From positions 36,896,696 to 36,960,695 of the forward strand of contig NC_069003.1 of the NCBI RefSeq assembly GCF_001194135.2: a DNA stretch of 64,000 nt, written 5' to 3'. The position numbers and the translations under genes were made by a program. Positions 28,806-52,473 of the stretch are shown here, piece by piece. How positions within the stretch are numbered: the stretch's first letter is position 1; every line of letters starts with the position of its first letter. This DNA comes from Octopus bimaculoides (lineage: Eukaryota). The notes under the pieces are model-generated. The model had not been told where the DNA came from. It saw nothing but the letters and a program-made list of their open reading frames with translations, and did no database searches.

Positions 28806-29897
28806 GTTGGTGATTGATTTATACGTGTATTAATCGTCTATCATTAGAAAAGGCATGAATGTTCCAACTTCCTATCTCAAGATGCAAAATGGAAGTTGGT
28901 GGAGGAAGAGAGAGTTCGGTCAGACAGGAAAATAAACATGTCTGTTTCTGTGCTTTACGTTTATCAAATTGCAATCACAGAGTATTGTTCCTCTGAAAGC
29001 TGGACACAGGGACAGGTGAAAACCCTTTGTCTTTATATAAAGACAAGGGGTTTTCCTATGTTTCCTCTATAAATCTACATTTGTCTCCACACTGTACTGA
29101 GTTATAAGATTGTGTAGCATAGGATAGCATTGAAACGAAACATTTTTAATTAACCAATAATTCTGTAATCAAACTAATTACCAAGAATGTGTTATGTATG
29201 CCAGCTGGCCATTCCATTTACTGTGATTGGGGTGAGAACAGCACAGAAATGAGGGTTGTGGATAGGTCATGTTGTGATGGGGGAGGCAGAGTTCTGTGTT
29301 GTTGTTTCACCAAAGTTCTTGCCATCTCAACAATGTAGGCCATAAGGTTTAAATTCTAACATATCAACCATCCCACTCACTCCAAATCTCTGTATCACAT
29401 CACCTATTCTCCCCACCACCACCACCACCAATGTCCCTAAGGGCATGTCCCAACATCTCTCCCTCTCTCATTCACTCCCCTTTCCAACTGGAGTTCTCAT
29501 CTATCCACTCTACAAAACACCTATGTCTCCTCTTTACCTTGAATCTTAAAACTGGCACAAAGCCCCCACACACACACACACACACCCAATATTACTGATC
29601 CCCCCCCCCNNNNNNNNNNCAATTGAGGGGGTTTTGACTTTTATATCTTGCAAAGGTGCTCGGTGACACAGTTGCTGCCAGTGCCACATAAAAAGCCCCC
29701 AGTTCACTCTTTAAAGTGGTTGGCATTAAGAAGGGAATCCAGCCTTAGAAACCTTGCCAAAACAAACAGTGCTGTCTGAGATGCTGTAAATTGTTTCGTG
29801 TAAAATCGATCTTGTATAAACCTATCCAACCCATATCATTGTGCCTGTCACTTTTGTTTTGATTGTTTTGTTTATTTTTATCTTTATTTCATTTCAG

Positions 29898-30045
29898 GGG
29901 CCACGTGTGTTTAGTTGTTAACGTGGCAAGTAAATGAGGTCTGACAGATTTGAATTATAGACAGCTACAGGAATTGTACGAGAAGTATGGGGAATCGAAA
30001 GGTCTCCGAATTCTTGCTTTTCCATCAAATCAATTTGGAAATCAG
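29898..30045 (+). CDS. GPX4: GPx4-like exon 3 with Sec codon ([49 protein letters not shown])
   Basis: tttcag acceptor, CAG|GTTTGT donor; in-frame TGA at 29935-29937 at the GPx active-site position VNVASxUG; LAFPxNQF signature follows in the same frame. Confidence 0.96.
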
Positions 30046-30152
30046 GTTTGTTAAATTTTCAGTATTTCGTTTTGTCTTTTAGAACCTGCTGCCTAAACAC
30101 ACACACAATCGCCTGTCTTTCTTTTTATCATTTTCCTCGTTGAACATTTCAG

Positions 30153-30298
30153 GAACCTGGCAGTAATGAAGACATAAAAAAGTTCGCCGAGGGATATAAT
30201 GTGACCTTTGACATGTTTAGTAAGGTCAATGTCAATGGTGCCGATGCCCATCCCCTTTGGCACGATCTTCAGCGTGTCCTGAAGGGATCGTTATGGAA
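30153..30298 (+). CDS. GPX4: GPx4-like exon 4 ([48 protein letters not shown])
   Basis: tttcag acceptor, AA|GTAAGT donor; QEPG and FSKVxVNGxxAHPLW motifs. Confidence 0.96.
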
Positions 30299-30449
30299 GT
30301 AAGTTTTTAATTTATGTCAAACAAAACTCCACTTTTATTCATTTTAATTTCCATTAGCTGTTGGGTTTTTCTTTTTTGCTCCAGCCTGGCCTATATTGAA
30401 GTGCTGTATGGCCAAAAGCATTACAGCTGTGGTCTTTCCTTCTATAGAG

Positions 30450-30815
30450 GCACAGGAATGGCTAAGAAATTTGCTTCCCAGCCACATGGTTCTTAGTTCA
30501 ATCCCACTGCATCGCACCTTTCACTAGTTCCTTCTACTATAGCTTCAGGTCAACCCAAATTCTTTGAGTGGATTTGGTAGATGAAAGGTGAAAGAAGCCC
30601 GTTGTGTATGTGTGTGTCTGTTTGTCCCTCCACCATTACTTGACAGCCAGTGTTGGTTTTGTTTAAGTCTCTGTAACTTAGCAGTTCAGCAAGAGTGACC
30701 AAAAGAATAAGTAGGAAAAAAAGAACTGGGATTGATTCAGTCAGCTAAAAATCCTTCAAGGTCGTACCCCAGGATGGCCCCAGTCTAATGCCTCAAACAA
30801 GTAAGAGATTAAAGA
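30450..30815 (+). mobile_element. SINE family A copy in GPx intron 4
   Basis: Head GCTTCCCAGCCACATGGTTCTTAGTTCAATCCCACTGC, central (TG)n, tail GTCTAATGCCTCAAACAAGTAAGAGA; reverse complement of the 27938-28270 copy. Confidence 0.7.
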
Positions 30816-30945
30816 TATCTGGGGCCATCAAAAATAGCAAGTTACTACAAATTTATTAAGAGTTCTATTGTTGAAAAATGAAGAATTTGCTGTGAAGACG
30901 GTTGCTCGTTATTCCTGTGTCATTGAACTCTGTTTATCATTTCAG

Positions 30946-31030
30946 TGCCATCAAGTGGAATTTCAGCAAATTCCTCATTGACAAAGACGGCAAACCTTTC
31001 AAGCGCTTTGCACCCAACCAGGAACCTAAG
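30946..31030 (+). CDS. GPX4: GPx4-like exon 5 (NAIKWNFSKFLIDKDGKPFKRFAPNQEPK)
   Basis: tttcag acceptor, AAG|GTAAGT donor; IKWNFxKFL motif carries the catalytic Trp and Asn. Confidence 0.96.
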
Positions 31031-32001
31031 GTAAGTTTAAACACATTTCAATCCGTCTTCTCCCTGAAAATAAAACAAAATTTTTATCATCATCATCATC
31101 ATCATCACCCCCATGGACCAAGAATTAGCATGATGTTTTAGTTGTTTAACCCCAGGTCCATCCTGACCAAGCAGATCTCCTATGATCAAAGGTGTTTCAG
31201 TAATCTGACTTTCCGAATGTGTTCTTTCTCTTTTTTTTAAAAAACATGTTAAATGTGGTTTTAAAGATTTGAGAAGCAAATAGCATTTCAGGGTTTGCAT
31301 TTCAAGTTCAAATCCCTCTGCTTTTTTATTTGGTTTTTTCTTTTGTGCTAAATTGAAATCCTCTCCTTTCACCACAACTTTCGTATATTTTTAATACTTG
31401 GCATCCATCTTTTAAACCAGTTCCTTTATTAACATTCATCCATTGTTTTGTTTCCAGTCTTCCTATTTGTTTCTGATTCTATCGAAAGCAACATCTGCTC
31501 CCTTCTTTTCTTCCTTCTCTCCCTCTTTCTAAATACTTGTTCTTTTCCCATATTTTGACTTCCTGTTGATAGGCTTGGCTGTGTGGTTGAGAAGCTTGCT
31601 TCCTAGCCATGTGATTTGGGGTTCAGTCCCACTGCATGTCGTGTGTGTGTGTGTGCACCCATGTCCTGATATCACATGATAGTTGTAAAGGAGCATCACT
31701 GTTAAACAAGTGAGGTTGTTGGTTTCCTTTTTCCATGGAAAAACATGTCTGGCCATCGGAAATATTAACCTGGCTTGGAAACAGTGGACGGTTGGCAACA
31801 GAAAGGACGTCTAAACCTGGAAATTCTGCCTCAGCAAATTCCATCTGATTCCTGTGGACATCAAATGATGTGATAATGTTGATGATGATGATAATGAACC
31901 AGACCAAAATGGTAACTTGTGGTTTCTTTTAATTGTCATTAGAATATAAATAAAATAATTATTTCAATGTAATCTTTCTGAATCTTTTTTTTCTCTTTCA
32001 G

Positions 32002-32178: not shown

Positions 32179-33636
32179 TTGTTGGTCCCTACCTATGGTT
32201 TTTTTTCCTTTCTTTCTTTCAAATGGTTGTTTGAAAAATATATATTTATTCATTTACAAAAAAAGAAATCCCTTTCCTTTATCCCCCGCTTTCCCTCTCT
32301 TCTTATAAAAATGACAAAAGAAACGATCGGTTGGTTACTTTTGGTTGGACTGAATGAAGCTGATTTCAGAAAACCTTTTGAGAAAGACACAACAAAGCAG
32401 AGTTGGAGAGAGTAAAACAGTGTTTTGTTGATCCACCACCACAACAACAATCACCAGAAGATTAACCAACCAATGTAGTAGTGTTTGTCTTTTTTTAGGT
32501 GTAAATGTTTGGATTAATTAAATTTTTGTAATTCAACTGATTGGCTTTTTTATTTATTTATTATTTTAAAAAAAAAAAAATTTTTTTTTTTTTTGCTTAT
32601 CTACTTATTCCTTGCTGCAGGGACCCTCCTTTTCATTGTTCTGTTTCTTCTTCCCTTTCTTTGTCTTGCAGGTTATTTGCCAACCTCACTGGTGCCAGTG
32701 TCGGGAAAGTAAAGCACCCAGTCCACACTCTGTAAAGTGGTTGGCATTAGGAAGGGCATCCAGCCGTGGAAACCATGCCAAAGCTGACATTAGAACTGGG
32801 CTCTAAGGAATCCGAAAGTCAGGTGGGGTGGGTGACACTTTAGAGAGAATGCACAGTAGTCACACCAACAACATACAAGGGGACAAATGGGACTGAGAGA
32901 TGAATGTGGAATAGAAAGGAGACAGGGGTGAATGATGGAACATCTCTTCTTTTCTAAATTTATGTTTAAAATTATTCTGGAAGAAACCAGATGATTAATG
33001 GAAAGGAAATGATCGGAAACTCGAGGACAAGTGAGAGTTTTACAACACAACCTACCGAAAGCTGCAGATAAGTTCAGTTGTTGCAGCAAGGCAACAGGGT
33101 GACACAAAAGCAGTGTAGACAGAGCATTAACAGCTAAAAGAGAGAGAAGGAAATACTGGAAGAGAGCGGGAAGGAAAGAACTATATGATGTAGCTTGACG
33201 AGAAGCAGTGGATGCATCAACAAATAAGGACTTCCAGTACATGCATCTCTCACCAGGTCTTCCACTGTAAAGAGCTCTTTTCTGTAGGGAGGCATAAATG
33301 AATGAATATCACAAAATGCTCCCTGCTACCTTCTTTTACAAGTCTGACTATTTTAGAGACAATACATCTTGAATTTTCTTCTAGGGGAGAAAAGAAAGGG
33401 AGAGTAAAACAGGAGAAGAAGAAAGGAATAGAATTTCATAAGACATTAATGACAAGAGGCAAGATATCTTTAATTTTTATTTGTTTCGCTCATTGTAGTC
33501 ATACTGGAGCACTGTCTTTAAAAAAATGGTTGCTCTGAAGCAGAGATCAAGGTCCATATGTGATCAAACACTCTCTTGTGTCCTTGTCAGGGGGAGAATG
33601 GACTATCTGTTCTTTTTGCTTTTATTATTTAGTTTT

Positions 33637-33678
33637 TCAGTAGCCCTGTTTAGTTGGTCTCATCATAATTTCATTAAT
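33637..33678 (-). CDS. DHRS11: SDR copy B exon 7 (INEIMMRPTKQGY-stop)
   Basis: ttttctttcag acceptor; resembles the DHRS11-type C-terminal IxxIxMRPTxQ; TGA at 33637-33639. Confidence 0.87.
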   Translation of the reverse strand: MNEIMMRPTKQGY

Positions 33679-34436
33679 CTGAAAGAAAACAAATCTTGGT
33701 AATTATCTTTTCTAATAGAAATCAAATTGAAAGGGTTGTCAGAAGAATCGGCATTTAATGTCCACTTTTCTACATTTGCATGAGTCAGACAAACATTGAT
33801 AATGTCAGCAAACAAATGACCACTCAAAGTACTGAAGAAACAAGATGTCATTAATAATTATTTCTACTCAAGGCACAAAGCCCTGAAGATTTTGGAGGAG
33901 GAGGGGAGAGTCAATTACATCGACCCTGTAAGGATGAAAGTTGACTTTGGCGGAATTTGAACTCAGAACATAGTGGCAGACAAAATACCGCTAAGCATTT
34001 TGCCCGACTCTGCCACCTCACTGCCCTCAAGATGTCATTAATAATGTTGTCTTTCGTTCATTTTCTTTGACAGACATTAGCTATATATAGTTTGTTTATC
34101 TGCTAAAATGAGACTTGTGATACAGTTTAAGCCAGCAAACAGTAATAATCTACACATCACTGAGCACCTCAGCTAGGAACCAAGATGGTGACAGCCATCA
34201 CAGAACAACCAAGACCAATGGCTGCATGAACTTAGGTCACTCAACTTCAGTTACACAATTCAACAACTGCGACAGGTCCTACTGCTGTTGCACATCTCAC
34301 ACAAACTGCTTCACTTGCTGTAAACATTTTCCCTCTCATTCATTACAGCAACACTCTGGTCCTCCCATCAACCTACCAACAAATATATCTGTGTTGCAAT
34401 CTCAATTGTTATTAAAAGAGATCAAAGGACACCCAC

Positions 34437-34502
34437 CTCACAGTGTTTGGGTACCTGAAGTGCAAACAGGACTGCATCAGCGACATCACCAGATTCAAGA
34501 AT
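34437..34502 (-). CDS. DHRS11: SDR copy B exon 6 (ILESGDVADAVLFALQVPKHCE)
   Basis: ttttcag acceptor, GAG|GTGGGT donor; DVAxAV motif; 66 nt as in copy A. Confidence 0.9.
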
Positions 34503-34671: not shown

Positions 34672-34755
34672 CTTAAAATCTCTGTTTGGAACTTCTTTTC
34701 TGTCTGGAAAAAGACGAGGGACAAATTCTGTGTCCACTAAACCAGGACTGATGGA
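34672..34755 (-). CDS. DHRS11: SDR copy B exon 5 (SISPGLVDTEFVPRLFPDRKEVPNRDFK)
   Basis: Pyrimidine tract plus tag acceptor, AAG|GTATGT donor; ISPGxVxT motif. Confidence 0.9.
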
Positions 34756-34925: not shown

Positions 34926-35150
34926 ATTGTCACTAGATGTGACTACAGTGTTAGAAACATCTACATGGCTAGAAATAAGAGCTAACATGTTCTAATGCTG
35001 TAGCAATACAAGTGTTTTTCAACACCCTAGTCAGATTTTGTGACAATTACAAGTCTCCTTTTTGGTAACACATTGCAAACTGCTGTTTATATTAATCTTA
35101 TATATATACATATAAGTGATGCTTAGTTAAAAAGTAGACTCAATACTTGC

Positions 35151-35280
35151 CGTGACTCTGATATCAGATTTGAGTCTTCGCAGCTCATTCCTGAGTCCTT
35201 TGGTCAGTGAAGTCACTGCAAATTTAGTTGCACTGTAGAAGTGAACATCTGGTGAGTCGACCACTCTGTGTCCAGACATA
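35151..35280 (-). CDS. DHRS11: SDR copy B exon 4 (MSGHRVVDSPDVHFYSATKFAVTSLTKGLRNELRRLKSDIRVT)
   Basis: Intact YSATK catalytic motif; 130 nt as in copy A; donor is non-canonical G|GCAAGT. Confidence 0.92.
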
Positions 35281-35935: not shown

Positions 35936-36030
35936 CTATTTATGTGGATGAAATGACCGTCAGTCACATTTCGTTCCTCCATGGATTTAAAAGATTCTCT
36001 TGTACAGATGCTAAGAGCCAAGACATTCAC
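35936..36030 (-). CDS. DHRS11: SDR copy B exon 3 (VNVLALSICTRESFKSMEERNVTDGHFIHINS)
   Basis: tctgcag acceptor, AG|GTCAGC donor, 95 nt as in copy A; carries the catalytic Asn and the start of the catalytic Ser codon. Confidence 0.92.
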
Positions 36031-36416
36031 CTGCAGACAGAAAGGTTACAGATTAATTTTAGTTTCCAATGTGAAGAAAACGACACATCCAAATGTATGG
36101 TCCTAATTAATCTTGAGTAAATTAGTCTTTATCAATGCAGCCAACTTCCTTACATGTGATTCATGCCTTTTGTACCAAGGCACACTTTCAGATCACATGG
36201 ACCCTACATTTTCTAGCTAATATTTTTGCAACTTTTGAAGAACTTCCACATTCAAAATCCATGATTCAGTATCAATCAGCATAGCACACCTGGCATAGAT
36301 TCTTGCAGGGAACCAAGATTTCTGAAGGCAGGGAAACTTGGGAAAAAAAAAGAATTCTAACAATACTTTCTCTGCTGGCAGCTTCCATTACCGAACAAGG
36401 ACAAGAAACCACTCAC

Positions 36417-36620
36417 ACTGAACATCTCCCGCCATTTGTTAGTGTCCCCAGTAAGCAATGGCTCGGCGTGGGCCAGTCCTGCATTGTTGATGCACACATC
36501 CACTCCTCCATAATGGGCCTTGATGGTGCCAAACATAGACAGGATGTCCGACTCATTGTTGAGGTCACATTTCACAGCCAACAAGGAACCTGCTTCACCT
36601 TTCAGTTCATCAGAGATTTC
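36417..36620 (-). CDS. DHRS11: SDR copy B exon 2 (EISDELKGEAG...GVDVCINNAGLAHAEPLLTGDTNKWREMFS)
   Basis: cttag acceptor, GTGAGT donor, 204 nt, phase 0/0; NNAG motif. Confidence 0.95.
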
Positions 36621-36970
36621 CTAAGATAGATTAGCAACAGAAAACAGTTAACATTGGATAATAACAGATTAAAAGATATTTAAGAACAGATTAACTGGTT
36701 TAATCAGAAATTTAACAATCAGTAAATAAAGAGGGAAAGGTAAACCCAGAGATTTAACAATATATTACAATGCGTGAGATTAACTGTGGATTTAATGGTA
36801 GTTAATACATAAGAGATTAAATGCTCACTATCATTAATAGATTAACAATGGATAATACTTGAGAGCTAATATTTATTAGGCTGAGAGACAAATATGAGAG
36901 TGTCTATGAAGAAAGGAGAGACAAATAAACAGAGAAAATGATTAGAAAATCTCAAAGAAATAATAATTAC

Positions 36971-37102
36971 TTGGATGCGCTGCACATTTCTTGCACAACC
37001 AACAACATTCATGCCAGATTTCACCAACTTCCTGCATATAGTGGCACCAATGCCACACGAAGCCCCAGTAACCAAGGCTGTCCGTTTAACCCATTTGTCC
37101 AT
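36971..37102 (-). CDS. DHRS11: DHRS11-like SDR copy B, exon 1 of 7; complement(join(33637..33678,34437..34502,34672..34755,35151..35280,35936..36030,36417..36620,36971..37102)), 250 aa
   Basis: MDKWVKRTALVTGASCGIGATICRKLVKSGMNVVGCARNVQRIQ: Rossmann TGxxxGxG motif; CAR basic residue typical of NADP(H) SDRs; CAA|GTAATT donor. Confidence 0.93.
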
Positions 37103-37650
37103 TGTGAAAAGCTTGTGTTGTTGTTGTTGACTGCTACAAGAAAAGGAAAATCAAATTCTTACTTAATTAAATTTATTAACAGGTGAGAGTGAAAATGAGG
37201 TTGAAATTCAGTGATGGTTCTGGCAAGCAAAAAAAAAAAAAACATCAGAAACAAAATACCTGAATAGATAAAATATTGATAAAATAGATAAACTATTGAT
37301 CTACCAGGTCATGGGTCACAAGTAGTGTATGGCATGGCTGGGTAATGGAGTTTGCTACAATCAATATCGTGACTCGGTAACATTTCAGTACGAATTATTT
37401 GCAATTTCTATACAGACACAACACGAAAATAATTTGTGGCTTTGTATCAAAATTGAAATACATTTTGAAAGTTGAGATTTAGGGAAAAATAAAAACAAAC
37501 ATGAAATATCTTTATTTGCTATGCACAGACTCAAAATTATAGCTCAACTCCAATTGAAATCAACTTTTATTTTCCAATTAATGAGAAATGGATTTTAAAA
37601 CCTCGATTTTAGATAAAATAAATAAAATGCATCAAGTTTGACTTCAGAAG

Positions 37651-38425: not shown

Positions 38426-41400
38426 ACGATGATGATGACGATACTAAAATCTTCAATATTGGAGGATATTAGCATGTCATTACGTCCTTTATCTTTCATA
38501 AACCCTATGGTAGACGTAAAACGAAAATAATGCGAGGAAAACAATATTTTCCAGATATTTAGCTGTTATTTCTAGCATATCGAGTTTTCTGGTGAGGGTT
38601 TCATATTTTGTTGTCTGCTGCTTGAGGAGCAATCTACGCATGCGCAAACGAACATGCAACCGGAGTTTTGTCCCTTTGAAAAAGTGGTCGGGGGGAGGTT
38701 CTCGAAGAAAATTTGAAACTTAAAGAAAAAATATTCTTCAGATTCTCCGTAGTTTTCCACGTGGATTAAAAAAAAAAAGTTAGAAGAAAGTGAAAAATAA
38801 AAAACAAAATTACGATGGGGATAGGCTAAATTAAAAGTTTGAAAGCGTGTTTCTTTCTGGCAAAATCGTGAGAAAAAAATGAAAAAAAAAAAAAAAANNN
38901 NNNNNNNNNNNNNNNNNNNNNNNNNNNNNNNNNNNNNNNNNNNNNNNNNNNNNNNNNNNNNNNNNNNNNNNNNNNNNNNNNNNNNNNNNNNNNNNNNNNN
39001 NNNNNNNNNNNNNNNNNNNNNNNNNNNNNNNNNNNNNNNNNNNNNNNNNNNNNNNNNNNNNNNNNNNNNNNNNNNNNNNNNNNNNNNNNNNNNNNNNNNN
39101 NNNNNNNNNNNNNNNNNNNNNNNNNNNNNNNNNNNNNNNNNNNNNNNNNNNNNNNNNNNNNNNNNNNNNNNNNNNNNNNNNNNNNNNNNNNNNNNNNNNN
39201 NNNNNNNNNNNNNNNNNNNNNNNNNNNNNNNNNNNNNNNNNNNNNNNNNAAAATCCTGCGAGGAAGAAAATCCGAGACAAAAAAAGGATCAACGCAATCA
39301 TAATTTCCATCCTCAAAAATAAAGATTTTTTACTTGTTTCAGTCACTGGATCGCGGTCATGCTGGATGAGCACCATGGACGAGTTGGGATCAAACAGATT
39401 CCGTTACGTTTTTTTTTTTTTTTAAGTCTGGCAATTATCGAGGTCGGGGTGTAAATACTCGGCCTCTGCCGTGTTACCTTCAAAACTTTTTTGACCGTTT
39501 CCATTGCCAAACTGCCCAAGGGTGACCCAAGTTCTATTATACAAGTTTGCGGTGCAGGTAAAGAATACGCACACCACCCATTTTCAACGTAACCCTGACT
39601 CTAAACACCGGTAAGATATATCTTGTTAGTATATAACGGAGGTAAGTTTTACATCATCTGAAAAAGTCATTAGTTGAACTATTTAGTCCTCTTGCATTCT
39701 GGTGGGTATCAGACCTTTTGAGTGACATTCGACCCCCAGCTGACGCCCTTAAATTAAATCTATTTGGGCCACGGTCGTGGCCTGCGCTTTTCGTGTTAAA
39801 CAACTGTGAAGATCGCTCTGTGACTTTATACACAACCAAATGAATAAGCAACGAAACACTACAACAATAGATTTGTAAATAATAAAGAAGGAGAAGAAAG
39901 AGAAATATTGGGAAAACATTTGCTTGAAACTTAATGAAGTAATTAATTTGTCTAGTTCATTAAGAGAGTTCGATAGTAATTTCTGTGTAAAATAACAAAC
40001 TTACCGCCAAGTGTAGAATCAAGTTTTGTGGTTGACAGAAATGTAATAAAGCGTGGTTGTGAATCAAAGCAGCCGGTTTAATGAGCAACCGATAAACTTT
40101 AGGGCTTTATGTAAATTTCTTATCTCGAGTCACGTCGAGACAGTGGGGGCAAGGAGGTAAGTAACAGCTGATTACATTCGCTGACCTGGTTTCGATTCCC
40201 GGGTGTGACAAATTTCTTTCACATTCGAAAGCTGATTTTCTGCAGCTTGTTGTCTGAGACTATGATTTTCATTTAGATTTACGAGCTTTTTACATATTAA
40301 ATAAGTTACGAGAATCAGTACATTCTGTGAGGCCCACCTCTGTATATTTGTATTATCAACAAACACCACAAAACAGAACAACGTTGTACAACAGACAGCA
40401 GCAGTGATTTATTCATCAGCATGAATTGGATGTGGAGAAATTGCTGGCCAGAGGAGAAACAAATCTGGCCGAACCGAATATATTTTCGTTAATCTTACGA
40501 CTCTTTTTGTTACATCACTTCTATTACAAAATAGTCATTAAAAATTGGGTTGTCTCCCCACTAAAAAAATGTGGCGACAAGAGACTGGATTGAAAGAGAT
40601 CTTTCTGATTCAATAATTCAACACATTGTTGATGTTTGGCCTCCTCAATAGGAATGGTATGGTGTTTTTGTTTGGCAAAATAATTGACAATTAATTGCAA
40701 TAATTGATTGGCCTATACCCCGATTAAAATTAAATGATTGGAAAGGTTCCAATCAATTATTTACACCGGTGGCGGTGGAGGTGCGTCTGTGTTAGTTTGG
40801 ATTATTTTGGATGTAAAAAGAGTTGACTTGCAATGCTATTATCTTACCACATTTATCTGTTTTATATGAAAACCAGAAACTAATGAACGGATTGAAGCCC
40901 CACCCCACCCCCACCCTTATTCATGATATTTACCAGACAGATAAAATGTTGTAGATGAGGTATGGACTGGACCGTTCAACAGGATCCAGTGAGTCAAATG
41001 ACTGTGTCAAGCTTTAATATCTTTCTTTGGCATAATTTCTATGACAAGATCCTTTCTTAACACCAATGGCTGTTCAGAATGTATTCAGTGCTTTTTACCA
41101 ACACTAATGAGGTTACTATGGAACTCCCAAGACTAAAAAGCTGCCTGGAAGTCTCGTAGAGAGAGGGGCACCAGCTTTATGCTAGGTGCTGAGGGTGACA
41201 AAAGCATGTAAATGTATAAAAGAGTGCAGCAAGCCTTGTCCTGGATGAAGAATTTGGAGTTTAAGTTTAAATCCTTGAGCATTACAAGCTTTTCTATACT
41301 GAACTTATCCAGCTCTCACCTGCTGTCTGTATCGTCGCCCTTCATAATGCCGACCACCTTACAGGGTGTACTGGGGGCTTTTTATGTGGCACCAGCATTA

Positions 41401-42212: not shown

Positions 42213-42278
42213 TTATGCTGTTAAATCACAGGAAATTTTGGGCCGTTGTTCAGTTGACTTCAATAAGATATCATTGAC
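42213..42278 (-). CDS. DHRS11: SDR copy A exon 7 (VNDILLKSTEQRPKISCDLTA-stop)
   Basis: attatag acceptor; aligns to copy B INEIMMRPTKQ; TAA at 42213-42215. Confidence 0.82.
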   Translation of the reverse strand, partial: VNDILLKSTEQRPKISCDLTA

Positions 42279-42479: not shown

Positions 42480-42545
42480 CTCACAATGCTTGGGTGTCTG
42501 TAGGGTGAAGACAACAGCATCTGCGATATCCTGCGGTTCAAGAAC
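42480..42545 (-). CDS. DHRS11: SDR copy A exon 6 (VLEPQDIADAVVFTLQTPKHCE)
   Basis: catag acceptor, GAG|GTATGT donor, 66 nt. Confidence 0.9.
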
Positions 42546-43204: not shown

Positions 43205-43297
43205 CTTGATTTTCTTAAACATGTATGTGACCAAATCATGTTTATCAGGATAGAGGCGGTATTGAAACTCTGACTCCACAATACCAGGGGATATGGC
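43205..43297 (-). CDS. DHRS11: SDR copy A exon 5 (AISPGIVESEFQYRLYPDKHDLVTYMFKKIK)
   Basis: ttctacag acceptor, AAG|GTTTGA donor; ISPG motif. Confidence 0.9.
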
Positions 43298-43754: not shown

Positions 43755-43884
43755 TGTAACTTTGATATCAGACTTGAGACGGCGCAGTTCATTCCTAAGC
43801 CCCGTTACTAGTGAAGTGATGGCAAATTTGGTTGCAGAAAAGAAGTGCACTTCTGGTAAGTCAATCACTCTATGGCCTGATAAG
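43755..43884 (-). CDS. DHRS11: SDR copy A exon 4 (LSGHRVIDLPEVHFFSATKFAITSLVTGLRNELRRLKSDIKVT)
   Basis: ttgcag acceptor, ACA|GTAAGT donor, 130 nt; FSATK replaces YSATK. Confidence 0.93.
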
Positions 43885-44339: not shown

Positions 44340-44434
44340 CTGTTAATGTAGATCACATGACCATCGTTGATCTCATGTTCCTGCATTGACTTAACGGCTT
44401 CTCTTGTGCAGATGCTGGGAGCCAATACATTCAC
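44340..44434 (-). CDS. DHRS11: SDR copy A exon 3 (VNVLAPSICTREAVKSMQEHEINDGHVIYINS)
   Basis: caacag acceptor, AG|GTCAGT donor, 95 nt. Confidence 0.93.
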
Positions 44435-45175
44435 CTGTTGAAAACACATATTAACCAAGATATTAAAGATGGAGAGAACTTGTGTGTATGTGTGTGCACA
44501 CAAACGCGTGTAGCTTATATACATACATACATACACACATATATATACGTGGGTGGTCTAAAAATCCATAAGTCAGGAAAAAGATGCGCTCATATATCTG
44601 TGGGTATATTATCCGAAGTGTACAATGTTATATATCCATCATCTCCAATCTTACGAATCGGTTTCACACTAGGGGTTCAATCGAGTGTTAGGTAACAATC
44701 TGATTATATAACCCTACGCTCATCAGAGGTAGCCGACATGGAATGAAATATGGTTTATTCCAGACTTGTGGTTTCAATGCATTTTGCTTTTGTATATCAA
44801 CTTTTGTTAGTTCCTTGTAAATTTTTCTTTGAGATAAGGGTGGTTCATTGGTAGAGTTTGTGTTGTTGGTTCTTATCACTAGAGTATCTTTAAGGAGAAT
44901 CTCTTGTATGTGGATATCATCACTGCTTTATCTAAAGTGGTCAAAACTGTGTTCAGTTTTGAGATAAATAAATTGAACTGACAAAATATTTCTGTGAGAA
45001 GTTTCTCCGTGTTTCTGATATCTCTCGATTGTTATTTCATTCGTTCTGACATTTTGTACATCCGAATAGATATGAATGGATTATCTGAAGTGTTGCACAG
45101 ATTTCATATATTAAGAAACAGTTGAGGAGAAAGAATGGAGGAAAGAGGGAGGGAGGAAGTGGAGAAACCACTTAC

Positions 45176-45379
45176 ATTGAACATCTCCCGCCATTTGTTA
45201 GTGTCCCCAGTAAGCAATGGCTCGGCGTGGGCCAGTCCTGCATTGTTGATGCACACATCCACTCCTCCATAATGGGATTTGATGGTCCCAAACATGGACA
45301 GGATGTCAGACTCATTGTTGAGGTCACATTTCACAGCCAACAAGGAACCTGCTTCACCTTTCAGTTCATCAGAGATTTC
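45176..45379 (-). CDS. DHRS11: SDR copy A exon 2 (EISDELKGEAG...INNAGLAHAEPLLTGDTNKWREMFN)
   Basis: cgcag acceptor, AAT|GTAAGT donor, 204 nt. Confidence 0.95.
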
Positions 45380-45534
45380 CTGCGATAGATTAGCAACAGA
45401 AAACACTTAATTAACATTGGATAACAGATTTTGATTAAGCAAAAATGGAAAGCAATAACCCAGTTTTTTAATGGGGGTGAGGTAACCAAAAAGTACCAAA
45501 ATTTTTTTCCTTTTTAAAAAAGTTAAAACCAAAC

Positions 45535-45666
45535 CTCAATATGCTGCACATTTCTTGCACATCCAACAACATTCATACCACTCTTCACCAAATTCCTACA
45601 GATGGCTGCACCAATGCCAGTGGAAGCACCAGTAACTAGAGCTGTTCGTTTAATCCATCGTTCCAT
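45535..45666 (-). CDS. DHRS11: DHRS11-like SDR copy A, exon 1 of 7; complement(join(42213..42278,42480..42545,43205..43297,43755..43884,44340..44434,45176..45379,45535..45666)), 261 aa, catalytic Tyr replaced by Phe
   Basis: MERWIKRTALVTGASTGIGAAICRNLVKSGMNVVGCARNVQHIE; TGxxxGxG motif; GAG|GTTTGG donor. Confidence 0.93.
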
Positions 45667-47458
45667 GGTTGAGCTGAGAGTTTGGTGAGGCACAAGAATA
45701 AGAAAATTAAATCATTTTGATGTAGGATTTGATGACGGACTATTTAGGAAAAAAACAAGAGAATTAGTGGGGAGGGGTACATATTTGAATGGGTGAGGAG
45801 GAAAGAGAGAGAGAGAGGATGAGAAGGAAGAAGTGAGATATTAGAAGGTAAATGTGTCGATCTTCCTTTACCATTTTTGCTCTAAATAACAACAACAATA
45901 AATTCTTCAAATTATTGGTACAAGACCAGCATGCCGATGATTCTGCCAGCTCACTGCCTTATTTATAATAATAATAATAATAATAATCCTTTCTACTCTA
46001 GGCACAAAGTCTGAAATTTGAGGGGAGGGGACTAGTCAATTAAATCAACCTCAGTATTCAACTGGTACTCATTTCATTGACCCCAAAAGGATGAAAGGCA
46101 AAGTCAACCTCAGCAGAAATTGAACTCAGAATGTAGCAACGGGCGAAATACTACTAAGAATTTTATTGGGTAGTCACAAGTGAGTTTGGATTTGTGAGAT
46201 GGGATATGAGGGAAGATTTGGCAGCTATTTCTAGCAGGTGAAGAATGATCATGTAGCAGATATTTTCTATGGGACCGCTATGCATGATTAACGGGAAATT
46301 CTTGAAAAATTTGAGAAAGTTTAATGCATTTTGCTGATGCAGTGCATGTGACAAAGTGTGTGTGTGTGTGTGTATGTAGTGAATGCACATGGTTTTGTGG
46401 TTGGGGGAATCAGCTCTCAACGGTAAGGTCGTTAGTTTGACTTCTGGAGGCATGTAATGTCCTTGAGCACAACATTCCATGTCGCTCCACTCGTTTGACA
46501 AAAAATGAGTTGTACCTGAGATAAAAAGGTAAAAAATGATAATAATAATAATAGAGTTTTGCTTCTTGGTTTGTGAGAACAACATAGCATGACAGCTGAG
46601 AATGGCTAGAAGAGGAACATATATTTGAATAGCAAAGTAAATTTTATGATTAGAAAATTGTTATTTTTAAATCTCACAACGAGAGATATTCAGTGACAAT
46701 ACTTTGGAGTAAAGATTGTTTGCCAATATAACATGGCAGTCCTGGAAATACATAGATATGGTTTTGAGCAGGGTGGTGGGTGCTAGATTCGCTTGTTCGA
46801 AAATATAAGGACACAGATTGTGTCGTATAGCCAGCTGGAGACGGTGTCTCCTGGGGCTAAATTACAGCAACATCAGTTCAAAACCAGGACTGCCATGTTA
46901 TGTTGGCAAACAATCTTTACTCTAAATTTTATGATGTTTGAAACTACATTTTCTTTTTAAAAAATATATATATTCTACTTACAAGGGAAAAATACAGAAG
47001 TATACTTTGTGTGTACAAAATATTTCGTGTGTCAGCTGCAGAAATCTCAATAAAAGAAAGACAGTTTTTGTTTTCCTGTGTTTATGACCTGAAATTACCA
47101 GACCAAGTAAGAAAGAAAACAAGTCTTTCTCTTTCACACAATTCAATTTTGTCAATGCATTTAGCATGCCAATTAATTACGCACACACACATCTGTGTGT
47201 GTGTGTGTGTATGGTCTGTATGTATTCAAAACCTGTTTTAGAGAGTTATGTAATCAACATCAAGCAAAGACATACCCTATGTATGTATGTATATACATGT
47301 ATATATATACATATTTCTAGTTGTTGCTTTTTTCGTAAATTCACCCATATATATATATACATTTACACATGCGTATATGTGTGTGTGTATATATATATAT
47401 ATACACACATGCATAAACATGTATATATACATGCACACACGTGTGTGTGTATCTTTTA

Positions 47459-49277: not shown

Positions 49278-49771
49278 CTTAAGACCAATAAAAAATATAC
49301 TAAATATTATTTTCCAGTTGTTTTCTTTAGTAAATCTAGAGTTGTCGCCCTTGCCTTGTGTTCCAAGAGTTTCGTCCTTAAAACACAGTAAATTGACATT
49401 AAATATTGCCTTTGATGGCATATAAAATGCAGACCCTCTATGCAAAGTCAGATCCATAATACATGCTTTAATGCATTAAATACCTTCTCCTTTTTTGCCT
49501 CAATATGCGTTGTTGAAATTGGGTTCCATCTAATCTACTCGTGCGTCTTTTATGCCATCAATTATAGTAACTTTATTATATTCACGCCTCTTAAGTATGC
49601 CAGTACTTACTTCAGTGAAATATTTTCACCATACACAGCCAAACTGTTTTGTTTCTTCGGAGATTGGAGAGAGAAAGCCAAGACACTGAGTCTTATGAAA
49701 GAGATGATGAAGAACTGAGACATCTGGTGCCTTACTGTATTCAAGACCACCACAGCAGGATTAATACTGGT

Positions 49772-49950
49772 GCTCATGCCACATAAAAAGCATCCAGTAC
49801 ACTTCGTGGAGTGGTTGGCATTAGGAAGGGCGTCCGGCTGTAGAAACCAGGCCAAAACAGCCAATGGAACCTGGTGCAGCTCTCCAGCCCTGCCAGCTCC
49901 TGTCAAAGCATCCAACTCACATCACCATGGAAACCGGATATTAAATGATG
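49772..49950 (+). mobile_element. Dispersed copy of the RTE-associated 3' tail family
   Basis: GTGGTTGGCATTAGGAAGGGCGTCCGGCTGTAGAAACC...GATATTAAATGATGACGAAGATGAT; colinear with 38270-38440. Confidence 0.7.
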
Positions 49951-50547
49951 ACGAAGATGATCATTATGTTAATGTGTATAAAAACACACAAACACAGAAA
50001 AAAAAAAAAGAAAAAAGAAAAACAAAACAAGACAAAACTCAGTATGGAAAGTGTTCATATCTTTTTTTTTATTATTCTGTTGATTTATGTACATTTACAG
50101 TCTCAGAAAACAAAGTGGAAGGGGCCAAGGGTTTGAGGCTTTCGCCTTTCTTAAAAAAAAAAAAATTATAGAATTAAGGACAGGGTAAAAAAAAAAAATA
50201 AATAAAAATACCTTTGTTGAAAGTCGAGAAAAAGAAAACAAATGGGGGAGACAGGAAAAAAAGTTTTCTTGAAATTTTAAATTCCGCATTCTTATAGTAA
50301 ATGTGAGAAAAATCCAACAGTCTCTCCAACTAATGTCTCCCAAACCTACAAGGAGTTTGTTTGGGTGGGGAGTGAGGTCGCCAGGTGCCAGTAGAGACTG
50401 GGCAGTCGACGGACATAGAAGAGGCTGGACATGCCAATATGAAATGCAGAAAACTCATTTTGCTTAGGGATTGCAGTAGTAAATGCAGAGACGTGATAGA
50501 CAGAGTGAAGAGAAGAGAGATAGAAAAATGGTGGTGGAAAGTAGTTC

Positions 50548-50594
50548 TCAAACACCTTCTCCTCTGGAGGGTTCATCGAAGTTTTCCACAAGAT
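50548..50594 (-). CDS. BTF3: BTF3 exon 6 (DLVENFDEPSRGEGV-stop)
   Basis: T-rich tract plus tttcag acceptor; conserved DLVENFDE motif; TGA at 50548-50550. Confidence 0.94.
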
Positions 50595-51270
50595 CTGAAA
50601 CAAAAAAAAAAACAAGCATTTATTATCTCACAGATTATCACAAAGCTTTGGAAAACAGTCACCTATTTTATTTAGTCAATCCCATGCTACTCGGCTGGTC
50701 TCACTAAAAATAAGCCAACGTACGAGGAGTATATTATTTTAAAATGATTCTCTCTCAGAATCAGGTTAAGACTTGCAGAGGGTCGTAGGAGGCCATTCAG
50801 AGTCCCTTCTTCAAAAAAGAAAAAAAGTGTTATGTCACTGAAACCATTCAAAGAGGGTCCAATGTATCGGCTGATTATGGGTTCTAGCTTTTGACTAGGC
50901 CTGCCCCATCGAAATTGTTGGCCAAAATTTAAAAACAATTATTATTATTATAAGGCAGTGGAGCTGGTAAAATCGTTTGTTCAGTGGCTTTTATGATCCT
51001 TACCGTTGATGTAAAACTGACATCGACATTTTGATATCGACTGTCAGAACATTACAAGCTAAAACCTTTGTTCTACCCACAAAGACTCCTTCTTGTTCCA
51101 CTGATTTGATTGAGGCCTTGAAATCCCTTTGAGTTACAAACTAGAAACTGAGAAGCCTGGTAGCTTATGTTGAGTGATAAGGGATGGGGAATGATGGTTA
51201 ATGCTTAAGGAAACATGCAAAAGCCTACAAGATGTGTGTGGGAATGGTGGAAGCAAAAAGTCTACTGTAC

Positions 51271-51333
51271 CAGGAACTTCATCATCATCAGCATCAATGT
51301 CTTCTGTAGAAGGTTTGCTGGTGTCTCCCTCTG
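51271..51333 (-). CDS. BTF3: BTF3 exon 5 (AEGDTSKPSTEDIDADDDEVP)
   Basis: Acidic linker ending DDDEVP; tandem cagcag acceptor; G|GTACAG donor; phase 1/1. Confidence 0.9.
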
Positions 51334-51714
51334 CTGCAAAAAACAATCAAACAGAGTTAGCCTAATCAACTATAATTATAATAATGACAACAACAACAAA
51401 GTGGACCATCATAAAAATATAAAAAGTGGATTAAACTATTTTTTAATAAATATTTCATGCCAGATGCAACACACCTGAAATATCTGAAGAAGTGTCCAGA
51501 ATGATGTCTGCTGTCAGTCGTTAACGATCTCGCTCCTATCAGTTGATGATCGACACACTTGACGTTTACCAATTAATATAATTTCCAAGAAATGTCTTCA
51601 AATTATTTTATAATTTCTATATTGGTTGCTATAGTAACATTATTATCAGATCAACCAGTGACAACAAAAACAACAACAGATTAAAGCAACAAAGGTCCAG
51701 ACAAGAAGACTTAC

Positions 51715-51804
51715 CTCCGGCCACGCTATTAGCCAACTTCTTTAAATTACTCAAACTCTCGGCACCAAGCTGGTTCAAGATTCCAGGTAACATTTCAGCA
51801 ATTT
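51715..51804 (-). CDS. BTF3: BTF3 exon 4 ([30 protein letters not shown])
   Basis: [11 protein letters not shown] motif; ttgtag acceptor, G|GTAAGT donor. Confidence 0.96.
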
Positions 51805-52364
51805 CTACAAAGATACATTCAAAATAACCAACACAATTGAACCAAATCAAAGACACTACATTATCAAGTTTATATGTTCACACCTATTTCTATTAGGGTT
51901 TATAGATTTGCCAGAGAAAATATGTTGAAGCAATTAACAGTTAAACAAATTGACAAAATCTTTGAAATTCCAGTTGCATAAAGCACCAGTGAAGTACAGT
52001 TTTTGCTCCTGAAAAGCTCCAGAAATTCTATTTTCAGTTTTGAAATTGAACAAAAACTCTGACAAGTTAATGGCACTAAAGTCCAAAAACATCAACAGTT
52101 GAATCATCTGATCAAGCTGATTGAAGACAAAAGAATAAAGCAATTTCCAGTTTTAAAGACTTTTGCTGACAAAAGTTCAAATTGAATGACTTTCAAACTG
52201 AATTTGCGAAAAAGTTCTTCCAACATTTGTGTGACAGGCCTAGTTGACATAAAACAAGACAAACCTAATTTACAAGGAACACCTTATGAAACCTATCACA
52301 TGTGTATACATATTCAAAGAGAGAGAGAGAGAGAGAGAGAGCAGAATACCAAGTGTAAACTTAC

Positions 52365-52473
52365 GCCTTGTCTCTGCATGGCCGGTAATGGCAAAGGTGT
52401 TAGCTGTCAAGGACGCCTGTACTTTGGGGTTGTTGAAATGAATTACTTGACCATCTTCTTTGATCATGTTCAC
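52365..52473 (-). CDS. BTF3: BTF3 exon 3 ([36 protein letters not shown])
   Basis: NAC domain core; tgtag acceptor, C|GTAAGT donor. Confidence 0.97.

What the first reader, a model, noticed from the sequence alone, without database searches (positions are those of the whole stretch)
43755..43884. SDR paralog A keeps an intact 261-aa frame but has lost the catalytic tyrosine (HFFSATK vs HFYSATK)
Seen: copy A has TTT (Phe) where copy B has TAC (Tyr), with no nearby Tyr to substitute. The Asn, Ser and Lys of the tetrad, the TGxxxGxG and NNAG motifs and all 7 exons with canonical splice sites are retained. Established: the YxxxK Tyr is the SDR catalytic acid/base and Tyr-to-Phe normally abolishes activity; A-to-I editing cannot turn UUU into a Tyr codon. 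Inference: a maintained pseudoenzyme beside an active paralog. It could be an NADP(H)-binding sensor, a regulatory partner in mixed oligomers with copy B, or a structural recruit (cephalopods use enzyme-derived lens crystallins).
Basis: partly seen in the sequence, partly recalled or inferred. Interest (0 to 1): 0.75.

Follow-up and report, generated by a model that had tools for sequence, protein, structure and literature searches.

The report
Tyrosine-less DHRS11 paralogue kept in octopus
One of two neighbouring octopus DHRS11-type dehydrogenase genes has swapped its essential catalytic tyrosine for phenylalanine, yet three Octopus species keep it intact under purifying selection, so it is most likely a retained "dead-enzyme" paralogue of a kind already known in this superfamily.

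Summary
Window 43755-43884 (minus strand) is exon 4 of a 7-exon, 261-aa DHRS11-like SDR gene (copy A) of Octopus bimaculoides. It reads HFFSATK, with TTT at 43839-43841. Tandem copy B (250 aa, about 8.6 kb downstream) reads HFYSATK (TAC).

The Phe is not an assembly error. Independent assemblies of O. sinensis and O. vulgaris carry the same TTT in the orthologous gene. It aligns without gaps to the catalytic Tyr of human DHRS11 (PDB 1XG5).

Phe is unique to this clade. All 121 other close family members have Tyr, and none of 149 diverse cluster representatives has Phe.

Copy A is under purifying selection: dN/dS is 0.09-0.17, with p about 1e-9 overall and 1e-5 without exon 2. That is at least as strong as on copy B. 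Introns are about 83% identical between species, against 96% for the coding sequence.

Copy A changed fast after the duplication. B and the single Argonauta gene share a unique 3-residue deletion, so the duplication probably predates the Octopus/Argonauta split.

Exon 2 is being homogenised with B by gene conversion. The converted tract stops short of exon 4.

Loss of activity, expression and the actual role were not tested. I file it as a new member of a known kind, of moderate interest.

The parts
45535..45666 (-). Copy A exon 1 (ATG; TGASTGIG cofactor motif; Arg38 of 'CAR')
   Evidence: Gene model with a GT donor. 98.5% identical to the O. vulgaris and O. sinensis orthologues.
45176..45379 (-). 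Copy A exon 2 (Asp63, NNAG). It lies inside a gene-conversion tract shared with B.
   Evidence: Exon 2 of A and B differs at 6 nt in O. bimaculoides and at 1 nt in O. vulgaris and O. sinensis.
44340..44434 (-). Copy A exon 3 (Asn114 of the tetrad, A-specific Pro118, Tyr141, and the first two bases of the Ser144 codon)
43755..43884 (-). Copy A exon 4, the reported interval (completes the Ser144 codon; HFFSATK; Lys163)
43839..43841 (-). Codon 159, TTT = Phe, in the place of the SDR catalytic Tyr
   Evidence: It aligns to Tyr of human DHRS11 (1XG5) without gaps. TTT is also found in O. vulgaris and O. sinensis.
43205..43297 (-). Copy A exon 5 (PGIVES: the otherwise invariant Thr of PGxxxT is Ser196; substrate-loop region of ancestral length)
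42480..42545 (-). Copy A exon 6
42213..42278 (-). Copy A exon 7, with an 8-residue C-terminal extension and the stop codon
   Evidence: The extension is predicted to be disordered.
36971..37102 (-). Copy B exon 1
36417..36620 (-). Copy B exon 2 (the partner in the gene-conversion tract)
35936..36030 (-). Copy B exon 3
35151..35280 (-). Copy B exon 4 (HFYSATK, Tyr159 = TAC at 35235-35237). The donor is GC (gcaagt) in this assembly.
   Evidence: The donor is GT in O. sinensis and O. vulgaris.
34672..34755 (-). Copy B exon 5 (PGLVDT; carries the 3-codon deletion shared with Argonauta)
34437..34502 (-). Copy B exon 6
33637..33678 (-). Copy B exon 7 and stop codon
45163..45430 (-). Gene-conversion tract, A side (exon 2 plus about 50 nt of intron 1 and 13 nt of intron 2)
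   Evidence: 93.7% identity over 271 nt by blastn and 96% over 248 nt ungapped. The other exons are 74-81% identical and the introns cannot be aligned.
36404..36670 (-). Gene-conversion tract, B side

Best explanation
Copy A is a tandem paralogue of the octopus DHRS11-type NADP(H)-dependent short-chain dehydrogenase/reductase (copy B). It is real and selectively maintained.

Its catalytic acid/base Tyr has been replaced by Phe (F159). The Rossmann fold, the cofactor-binding motifs and the other three tetrad residues (N114, S144, K163) are kept.

The most likely working model has two parts. First, A still folds like DHRS11 and probably still binds NADP(H), and perhaps a ligand. Second, it cannot carry out the normal Tyr-mediated proton transfer, so it acts as a pseudo-dehydrogenase.

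The most plausible non-catalytic role is as a subunit of oligomers, homomeric or mixed with the adjacent active copy B. This would resemble other SDR complexes that combine an active and an inactive subunit.

Shown here: the substitution, its conservation in Octopus, purifying selection, the intact motifs and fold, and the fast divergence followed by constraint. Inferred: loss of activity, retained cofactor binding, and the role as a partner.
For: Sequence and gene model.

Identity as DHRS11-like: Pfam adh_short E=3e-45. Human DHRS11 1XG5 scores E=7e-89 with F159 aligned on the Tyr. An AlphaFold model has core pLDDT above 90 and matches 1XG5 with target-normalised TM 0.96 and rmsd 0.9 A.

Not an error: TTT is present in three assemblies.

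Rarity: Tyr in 121 of 124 close family members, with Phe only in the three Octopus A proteins. No Phe among 149 representatives of 50%-identity clusters after realignment.

Selection: dN/dS of A between O. bimaculoides and O. vulgaris/sinensis is 0.09-0.17. Binomial p is 1.8e-9, or 2e-5 without exon 2. Introns are about 83% identical against 96.3% for the coding sequence.

Divergence then constraint: 31 A-specific against 5 B-specific residue changes relative to Argonauta. A alone departs from family consensus at 8 positions (at least 85% conserved) where B and Argonauta keep it, including the two fully invariant ones, Y159F and T196S of PGxxxT.

Precedents for conserved inactive SDR subunits: petunia benzaldehyde synthase beta subunit (PMC13418739), and BbsCD and HSD17B8/CBR4 cited there. 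HSDL1 is 'inactive but conserved' (Meier et al. 2009, cited in PMC9859523, and discussed in PMC11209984).
Against: No activity, cofactor-binding or interaction data exist.

Expression was not verified. No transcript-derived copy could be found in the collections reachable here, though the same is true of copy B.

In some SDRs, Tyr-to-Phe mutants keep measurable activity (my own recollection, not checked here). Retention of S144, K163 and N114 under selection is also what a still-working active site would look like.

Conservation rests on only two effectively independent lineages, separated by dS of about 0.13.

The mixed-oligomer idea has no direct support beyond adjacency, similar alphaE/alphaF helices and precedent.
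Confidence: 0.65

Rival explanations
1. Copy A is still an active oxidoreductase, or catalyses an altered reaction. It would use another proton donor, such as water relayed through Lys163 and Ser144, His157, or the A-specific Tyr141. Alternatively it acts on substrates that need little acid catalysis.
For: S144, K163, N114 and all cofactor motifs are retained under strong purifying selection. Tyr141 occurs only in the A clade; the other members have N, H or L there. Other lineages of the same family replaced the Tyr with His, a possible acid/base, and kept those genes: Lingula, five Schistocerca species and Hetaerina. So Tyr is not absolutely required for gene retention in this family.
Against: Phe cannot donate a proton. 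The Tyr is invariant in all 121 other close homologues. Residue 141 sits three residues before Ser144 on strand beta5, where side chains alternate between the two faces of the sheet, so it is inferred (not measured) to point away from the catalytic centre. A second invariant residue near the nicotinamide, Thr196, is also changed.
Confidence: 0.22
2. Copy A is a non-functional duplicate on its way to decay, or the Phe is an assembly or annotation artefact.
For: No direct expression evidence was obtained. The O. vulgaris GenBank model of A is truncated (P0002, 234 aa). The current RefSeq model in O. bimaculoides fuses A to B (P0122).
Against: The 261-codon frame and all GT-AG splice sites are intact in three species. 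The same TTT is present in three independent assemblies. dN/dS is 0.09-0.17 and significantly below 1, also outside the gene-converted exon. Exons are 96% identical between species and introns about 83%.
Confidence: 0.03
3. A and B are two halves of one tandem-domain protein, a pseudo-SDR fused to an active SDR, as in RefSeq XP_014769982.2 (557 aa).
For: The RefSeq model joins A to B in three steps: a GC donor 3 nt before A's stop codon, an exon at window 40175-40285, and B's 5'UTR. All are in frame.
Against: In O. sinensis and O. vulgaris the linker exon carries a 1-nt deletion that creates an in-frame stop (CTC GTA ATC TAA). It is only about 86% identical, which is intron-like. O. sinensis RefSeq annotates A and B as separate genes. 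An open 47-codon linker is expected by chance about 10% of the time (my estimate).
Confidence: 0.05

Closest known systems
Human DHRS11 (SDR24C1; PDB 1XG5, with NADP) and arthropod NADP-dependent farnesol dehydrogenases (PDB 7W61)
   Same: Same family and fold. A is 53-54% identical to 1XG5 with E=7e-89, and the model matches with TM 0.96. It has the same TGxxxGxG, 'CAR' arginine, NNAG, Asn, Ser and Lys, and about the same length and loop lengths.
   Different: The catalytic Tyr is Phe and the PGxxxT Thr is Ser. A also has Pro118 in helix alphaE and an 8-residue C-terminal extension.
HSDL1 (hydroxysteroid dehydrogenase-like 1), the vertebrate 'inactive but conserved' SDR
   Same: It is an SDR that is conserved across species yet annotated as inactive (Meier et al. 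2009, as cited in PMC9859523 and discussed in PMC11209984). From memory, not verified here: its YxxxK motif also reads FxxxK, and Phe-to-Tyr restores activity.
   Different: It belongs to a different SDR family and is not orthologous, since A's nearest relatives are all DHRS11. HSDL1 is ancient and vertebrate-wide. A is an octopod-lineage tandem duplicate sitting next to its active parent.
Hetero-oligomeric SDRs with a catalytically inactive subunit: petunia benzaldehyde synthase alpha2beta2, BbsCD, human HSD17B8/CBR4
   Same: Two paralogous SDR subunits, one lacking a tetrad residue. The inactive one is conserved because it stabilises the complex or completes the substrate site (PMC13418739).
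   Different: Heteromer formation by A and B is untested. PhBS-beta lost the Lys and a cofactor-binding Arg, whereas A keeps Lys and all cofactor motifs and lost only the Tyr. A and B are 75% identical; the petunia subunits are about 30% identical.
Tyr-less DHRS11/farnesol-dehydrogenase-like paralogues in other invertebrates (Lingula anatina, Schistocerca spp., Hetaerina americana)
   Same: Independent replacement of the catalytic Tyr within the same family. In the locusts it is retained across several species.
   Different: Those carry His (one unnamed sequence has Asn, another Trp), which could still act as an acid/base. Only the Octopus clade has Phe. None is functionally characterised, as far as I could find.

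Membership tests
Classical short-chain dehydrogenase/reductase (Pfam adh_short, PF00106) | Profile match above the curated cut-off, and a Rossmann-type SDR fold | tested here: met
   154 bits against a cut-off of 26.6. The AlphaFold model matches 1XG5 with TM 0.96.
Classical short-chain dehydrogenase/reductase (Pfam adh_short, PF00106) | Cofactor motifs TGxxxGxG and NNAG | tested here: met
   TGASTGIG and INNAG are present.
Classical short-chain dehydrogenase/reductase (Pfam adh_short, PF00106) | Complete Asn-Ser-Tyr-Lys catalytic tetrad (YxxxK) | tested here: not met
   N114, S144 and K163 are present, but position 159 is Phe.
DHRS11 (SDR24C1) family | Closest relatives and closest solved structure are DHRS11 | tested here: met
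   The top database hits are all named DHRS11 or DHRS11-like. The best PDB hit is 1XG5.
DHRS11 (SDR24C1) family | NADP(H)-dependent 17beta/3beta-hydroxysteroid or carbonyl reductase activity | not testable with these tools
   Needs an enzyme assay. The Tyr needed for the canonical mechanism is missing.
Pseudoenzyme (conserved catalytically dead paralogue) | Homologue of an active enzyme that lacks an essential catalytic residue | tested here: met
   Y159F at a position that is Tyr in all 121 other close homologues.
Pseudoenzyme (conserved catalytically dead paralogue) | Maintained by purifying selection across species | tested here: met
   dN/dS 0.09-0.17, p=2e-9, or 2e-5 without exon 2. Only two effectively independent lineages were available.
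Pseudoenzyme (conserved catalytically dead paralogue) | Demonstrated lack of catalytic activity | not testable with these tools
   Inference from the general SDR mechanism only.
Pseudoenzyme (conserved catalytically dead paralogue) | Expressed as RNA and protein | tested here: inconclusive
   RefSeq models exist in two species, but no transcript-derived sequences could be retrieved for A or for B.
Hetero-oligomeric SDR with an inactive subunit (PhBS, BbsCD, HSD17B8/CBR4 type) | Two distinct SDR paralogues, one lacking a tetrad residue, encoded together | tested here: met
   A and B lie in tandem about 8.6 kb apart on the same strand.
Hetero-oligomeric SDR with an inactive subunit (PhBS, BbsCD, HSD17B8/CBR4 type) | Physical A-B complex required for, or modulating, activity | not testable with these tools
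   No multimer prediction or interaction data are available here.
Unprocessed pseudogene | Frame disruptions, lost splice sites or neutral evolution | tested here: not met
   Intact frame and GT-AG sites in three species. dN/dS is well below 1.
Enzyme-derived lens crystallin | Very high lens-specific expression | not testable with these tools
   No expression data. No paper linking octopus DHRS11 to the lens was found.

The most novel reading that the evidence does not exclude
Copy A is an octopod-specific, NADP(H)-binding, non-catalytic SDR with a new job. One option is an obligate regulatory or scaffolding subunit that tunes the steroid or isoprenoid (farnesol-type) reductase activity of copy B in mixed tetramers. 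The other is a ligand or redox-state sensor or carrier, in the way NmrA-like proteins and NADPH-binding fluorescent SDRs work. It would have arisen before the Octopus/Argonauta split, and its Phe would be protected from the gene conversion that still homogenises exon 2.
Probability: 0.2. Interest if true: 0.6.

Novelty: new member of a known kind. Interest (0 to 1): 0.4.

Why it matters
If A really is a conserved dead dehydrogenase, it is a clean natural experiment. It is a young-to-middle-aged tandem pair in which one copy lost only the proton-donating hydroxyl and kept everything else, then went through a burst of change and settled under strong constraint.

That makes it a tractable system for asking how SDR pseudoenzymes acquire non-catalytic roles: cofactor sensing, ligand holding, or heteromer regulation. 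An F159Y back-mutation is an obvious control.

It also flags an annotation problem, because all databases name it 'DHRS11-like' with no warning that the catalytic Tyr is absent. DHRS11-type enzymes act on steroids and, in arthropods, on farnesol. A regulator of such an enzyme could therefore matter for cephalopod hormone or isoprenoid metabolism, but that is speculation.

Tried and rejected
- A 118-aa A-specific query found nothing. A 149-aa query found only the O. vulgaris orthologue. The word index is too sparse for fragments, so no transcript-derived copies and no A-type genes from other octopods could be recovered. No decapodiform DHRS11 was seen either.
- Literature searches for DHRS11 in octopus returned nothing relevant. 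Direct full-text confirmation of the HSDL1 Phe-for-Tyr detail was not found.
- I looked for relics of an A copy in the 10-kb flanks of the single Argonauta gene and found none.
- The RefSeq A-B fusion ORF was tested for conservation and rejected, because there is a frameshift and stop in the congeners.
- A pairwise-BLAST survey flagged P0178 and P0245 as Phe-bearing. Realignment showed both have Tyr.
- Synonymous distances between A, B and Argonauta are saturated (dS above 1), so they cannot date the duplication.
- The difference in dN/dS between A and B is not significant (Fisher p=0.13).

Full report
**What is there.** The window is from Octopus bimaculoides; the best database hit is the species' own protein at 100% identity. 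The reported interval 43755-43884 is, on the minus strand, exon 4 of a seven-exon gene. Its acceptor is ttgcag and its donor gtaagt. In frame it encodes LSGHRVIDLPEVHFFSATKFAITSLVTGLRNELRRLKSDIKVT.

I assembled the whole gene, copy A. Its exons are 45535-45666, 45176-45379, 44340-44434, 43755-43884, 43205-43297, 42480-42545 and 42213-42278. All introns are GT-AG, and the product is 261 aa.

A second gene lies about 8.6 kb downstream on the same strand, copy B. Its exons are 36971-37102, 36417-36620, 35936-36030, 35151-35280, 34672-34755, 34437-34502 and 33637-33678, giving 250 aa. The two proteins are 75% identical.

The motif in A is H157-F158-F159-S160-A161-T162-K163, with codons CAC TTC TTT TCT GCA ACC AAA. 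The TTT is at window 43839-43841. In B it is CAC TTC TAC AGT GCA ACT AAA. No assembly gap lies inside gene A.

**What family it is.** Both proteins match Pfam adh_short far above the cut-off. The best solved structure by sequence is human DHRS11, PDB 1XG5, at E=7e-89. The alignment has no gap around the motif and places F159 on the catalytic Tyr of HFYSATK. An AlphaFold model of the annotated protein P0001 has a core pLDDT above 90. It superposes on 1XG5 with target-normalised TM 0.96 and rmsd 0.9 A. A keeps TGASTGIG, the 'CAR' arginine that accompanies NADP(H) preference (established SDR knowledge), NNAG, Asn114, Ser144 and Lys163.

**Is the Phe real and unusual?** Gene models built from independent assemblies of O. 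sinensis (L002) and O. vulgaris (L001) give the same 261-aa protein, with the same exon lengths, GT-AG sites and TTT codon. O. sinensis RefSeq annotates it as XP_029650093.1. The O. vulgaris GenBank model (P0002) skips part of exon 2, but the exon is intact in the DNA.

Among 124 close family members, the aligned position is Tyr in 121 and Phe only in the three Octopus A proteins. Asn and Lys are invariant, and Ser is present in 123 of 124.

I also surveyed 149 representatives of 50%-identity clusters drawn from 1.84 billion proteins. After realignment a handful have lost the Tyr: His in Lingula, Schistocerca spp. and Hetaerina, Asn in one sequence and Trp in another. None has Phe. So losing the Tyr recurs at low frequency in this family, but the Phe replacement was seen only in this clade in the samples examined.

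The neighbouring Ser160 codon also differs between the copies, TCT in A against AGT in B and Argonauta. Four consecutive nucleotides therefore differ (TACAG against TTTTC), which looks like a single multinucleotide event.

**Is it maintained?**
- Between O. bimaculoides and O. vulgaris/sinensis, A has 29-32 nucleotide differences but only 6-8 amino-acid differences.
- dN/dS is 0.09-0.17 depending on the method.
- A binomial test against neutrality gives p=1.8e-9 for the whole gene. It gives p=2e-5 when exon 2 is left out.
- Copy B gives 0.20-0.24 for the whole gene. The A/B difference is not significant (Fisher p=0.13).
- A's introns are about 83% identical between the species, against 96.3% for its coding sequence.

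O. vulgaris and O. sinensis differ by 3 nt in this gene, so this amounts to one interspecific comparison.

**History.** Argonauta hians has a single gene with Tyr, lying between a BTF3/NAC gene and a DEK_C gene (L003). Its flanks hold no recognisable remnant of a second copy. In Octopus the order is BTF3/NAC, A, B, then a glutathione peroxidase gene.

Outside exon 2, A carries 31 lineage-specific residue changes against 5 for B, relative to Argonauta. A alone departs from the family consensus (at least 85% conserved) at eight positions where B and Argonauta keep it: L118P, R132H, Y159F, V166I, R185K, T196S, R247K and P248S. Two of these positions are otherwise fully invariant: the catalytic Tyr and the Thr of PGxxxT.

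B and the Argonauta gene share a 3-residue deletion after PGxxxT that is found in none of the other 119 sequences. A keeps the ancestral length and pattern. Three substitutions also group B with Argonauta, against one that groups A with B. The duplication therefore probably predates the Octopus/Argonauta split, and Argonauta lost A or lacks it at this locus. This is moderate evidence, since gene conversion can blur such signals. When Y159F arose on the A lineage cannot be dated with the data I could reach.

**Gene conversion.** Exon 2 and a few tens of bases of flanking intron are 94-96% identical between A and B, at 45163-45430 and 36404-36670. The other exons are 74-81% identical and the introns do not align. 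Within each species the two exon-2 copies are more alike than the orthologues are across species: 1-6 differences against 8-11. This indicates repeated conversion after speciation. The tract ends well before exon 4, so the Phe and Tyr codons stay distinct.

**The fusion model.** The current RefSeq protein XP_014769982.2 (557 aa) joins A to B in three steps: a GC donor 3 nt before A's stop, an exon at 40175-40285, and B's 5'UTR. In O. sinensis and O. vulgaris that exon has a 1-nt deletion producing an early stop, and it is only about 86% identical. I therefore treat the fusion as a read-through or annotation product, not a conserved protein.

**Mechanism.** By established SDR enzymology, the Tyr of YxxxK is the acid/base. 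Its pKa is lowered by the Lys, while the Ser orients the substrate and the Asn supports a proton relay. Phe cannot do this.

The best-supported reading is a pseudo-dehydrogenase that still folds and probably still binds NADP(H). It is kept for a non-catalytic role, most plausibly as an oligomer subunit, possibly together with B. Conserved inactive SDR subunits are documented for petunia benzaldehyde synthase (PMC13418739), and that paper also cites BbsCD and HSD17B8/CBR4. HSDL1 is a conserved 'inactive' SDR.

The main rival is that A remains active through another proton donor or on an easy substrate. The retained Ser, Lys and Asn, and the A-specific Tyr141, leave this open. I give the rival about 0.2. 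Pseudogene and artefact readings are essentially excluded.

**Verdict.** It is a new member of a known kind (SDR pseudoenzymes and Tyr-less SDR paralogues), of moderate interest. Expression, cofactor binding, activity and partners remain to be measured.

Noticed in passing
window 45163-45430 and 36404-36670 (minus strand): Exon 2 plus short intron flanks of A and B are 94-96% identical, while the other exons are 74-81% identical. Within each Octopus species the two exon-2 copies are closer to each other than to their orthologues. This indicates recurrent gene conversion that stops before exon 4.
   Followed up: yes
window 35149-35150 (minus strand), donor of copy B exon 4: The donor is GC (ACG|gcaagt) in this O. 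bimaculoides assembly but GT in O. sinensis and O. vulgaris. It is either a functional GC-AG intron or a base error. If it were not spliced, B would be truncated.
   Followed up: partly
window 40175-40285 (minus strand), with 42219-42221 and 37103-37132: RefSeq XP_014769982.2 (557 aa) fuses A and B through a GC donor 3 nt before A's stop codon, this linker exon and B's 5'UTR. The linker's frame is broken by a 1-nt deletion in O. sinensis and O. vulgaris, so the fusion ORF is not conserved.
   Followed up: yes
window 43836-43841 (minus strand): The Tyr-to-Phe change is accompanied by a serine codon-family switch in the next codon (TAC AGT against TTT TCT). Four consecutive bases differ, which suggests one multinucleotide mutation.
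   Followed up: partly
window 44358-44360 (minus strand; copy A exon 3, residue 141) and 43271-43273 (minus strand; copy A exon 5, residue 196): Tyr141 (others have N, H or L) and Ser196 (an otherwise invariant Thr of PGxxxT) are specific to the A clade. Both lie near the active-site or nicotinamide region by homology. Their structural meaning is untested.
   Followed up: partly
L004 and L006 (O. sinensis CM016881.1, 18.33-18.41 Mb): O. sinensis carries two B copies about 44 kb apart that differ by 2 nt (1 aa). O. vulgaris shows one. This is either a very recent duplication or an assembly duplication.
   Followed up: no
L001 14484-14546 (O. vulgaris): A partial extra copy of A's exon 3 (62 nt, 97% identical) lies in intron 2 of the O. 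vulgaris A gene.
   Followed up: no
proteins P0229/P0276 (Lingula anatina), P0251 cluster (five Schistocerca species), P0225 (Hetaerina americana): Independent DHRS11/farnesol-dehydrogenase-like paralogues have His in place of the catalytic Tyr, and the locust ones are conserved across species. One Lingula cluster member (P0277) still has Tyr.
   Followed up: partly
window ~50544-52473 (minus strand) and ~29900-31100 (plus strand): The flanking genes are a BTF3/NAC-domain gene upstream of A and a glutathione peroxidase gene convergent with B. The order matches O. vulgaris. Argonauta has DEK_C downstream instead.
   Followed up: partly
window 29673-29771, 32694-32792, 49768-49866; also 33937-34001 and 46100-46164: Dispersed SINE-like repeat families, one with a tRNA-like 'GAATTTGAACTCAGAAC' core, lie around the two genes and in B's last intron. 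Twelve N-runs totalling 2497 nt occur in the window, one of them (38898-39249) between A and B.
   Followed up: no
PDB 3P19: An NADPH-dependent blue fluorescent protein, an SDR that binds NADPH, is among the nearest solved structures. It is only a reminder that NADPH-binding SDRs can have non-redox uses.
   Followed up: no
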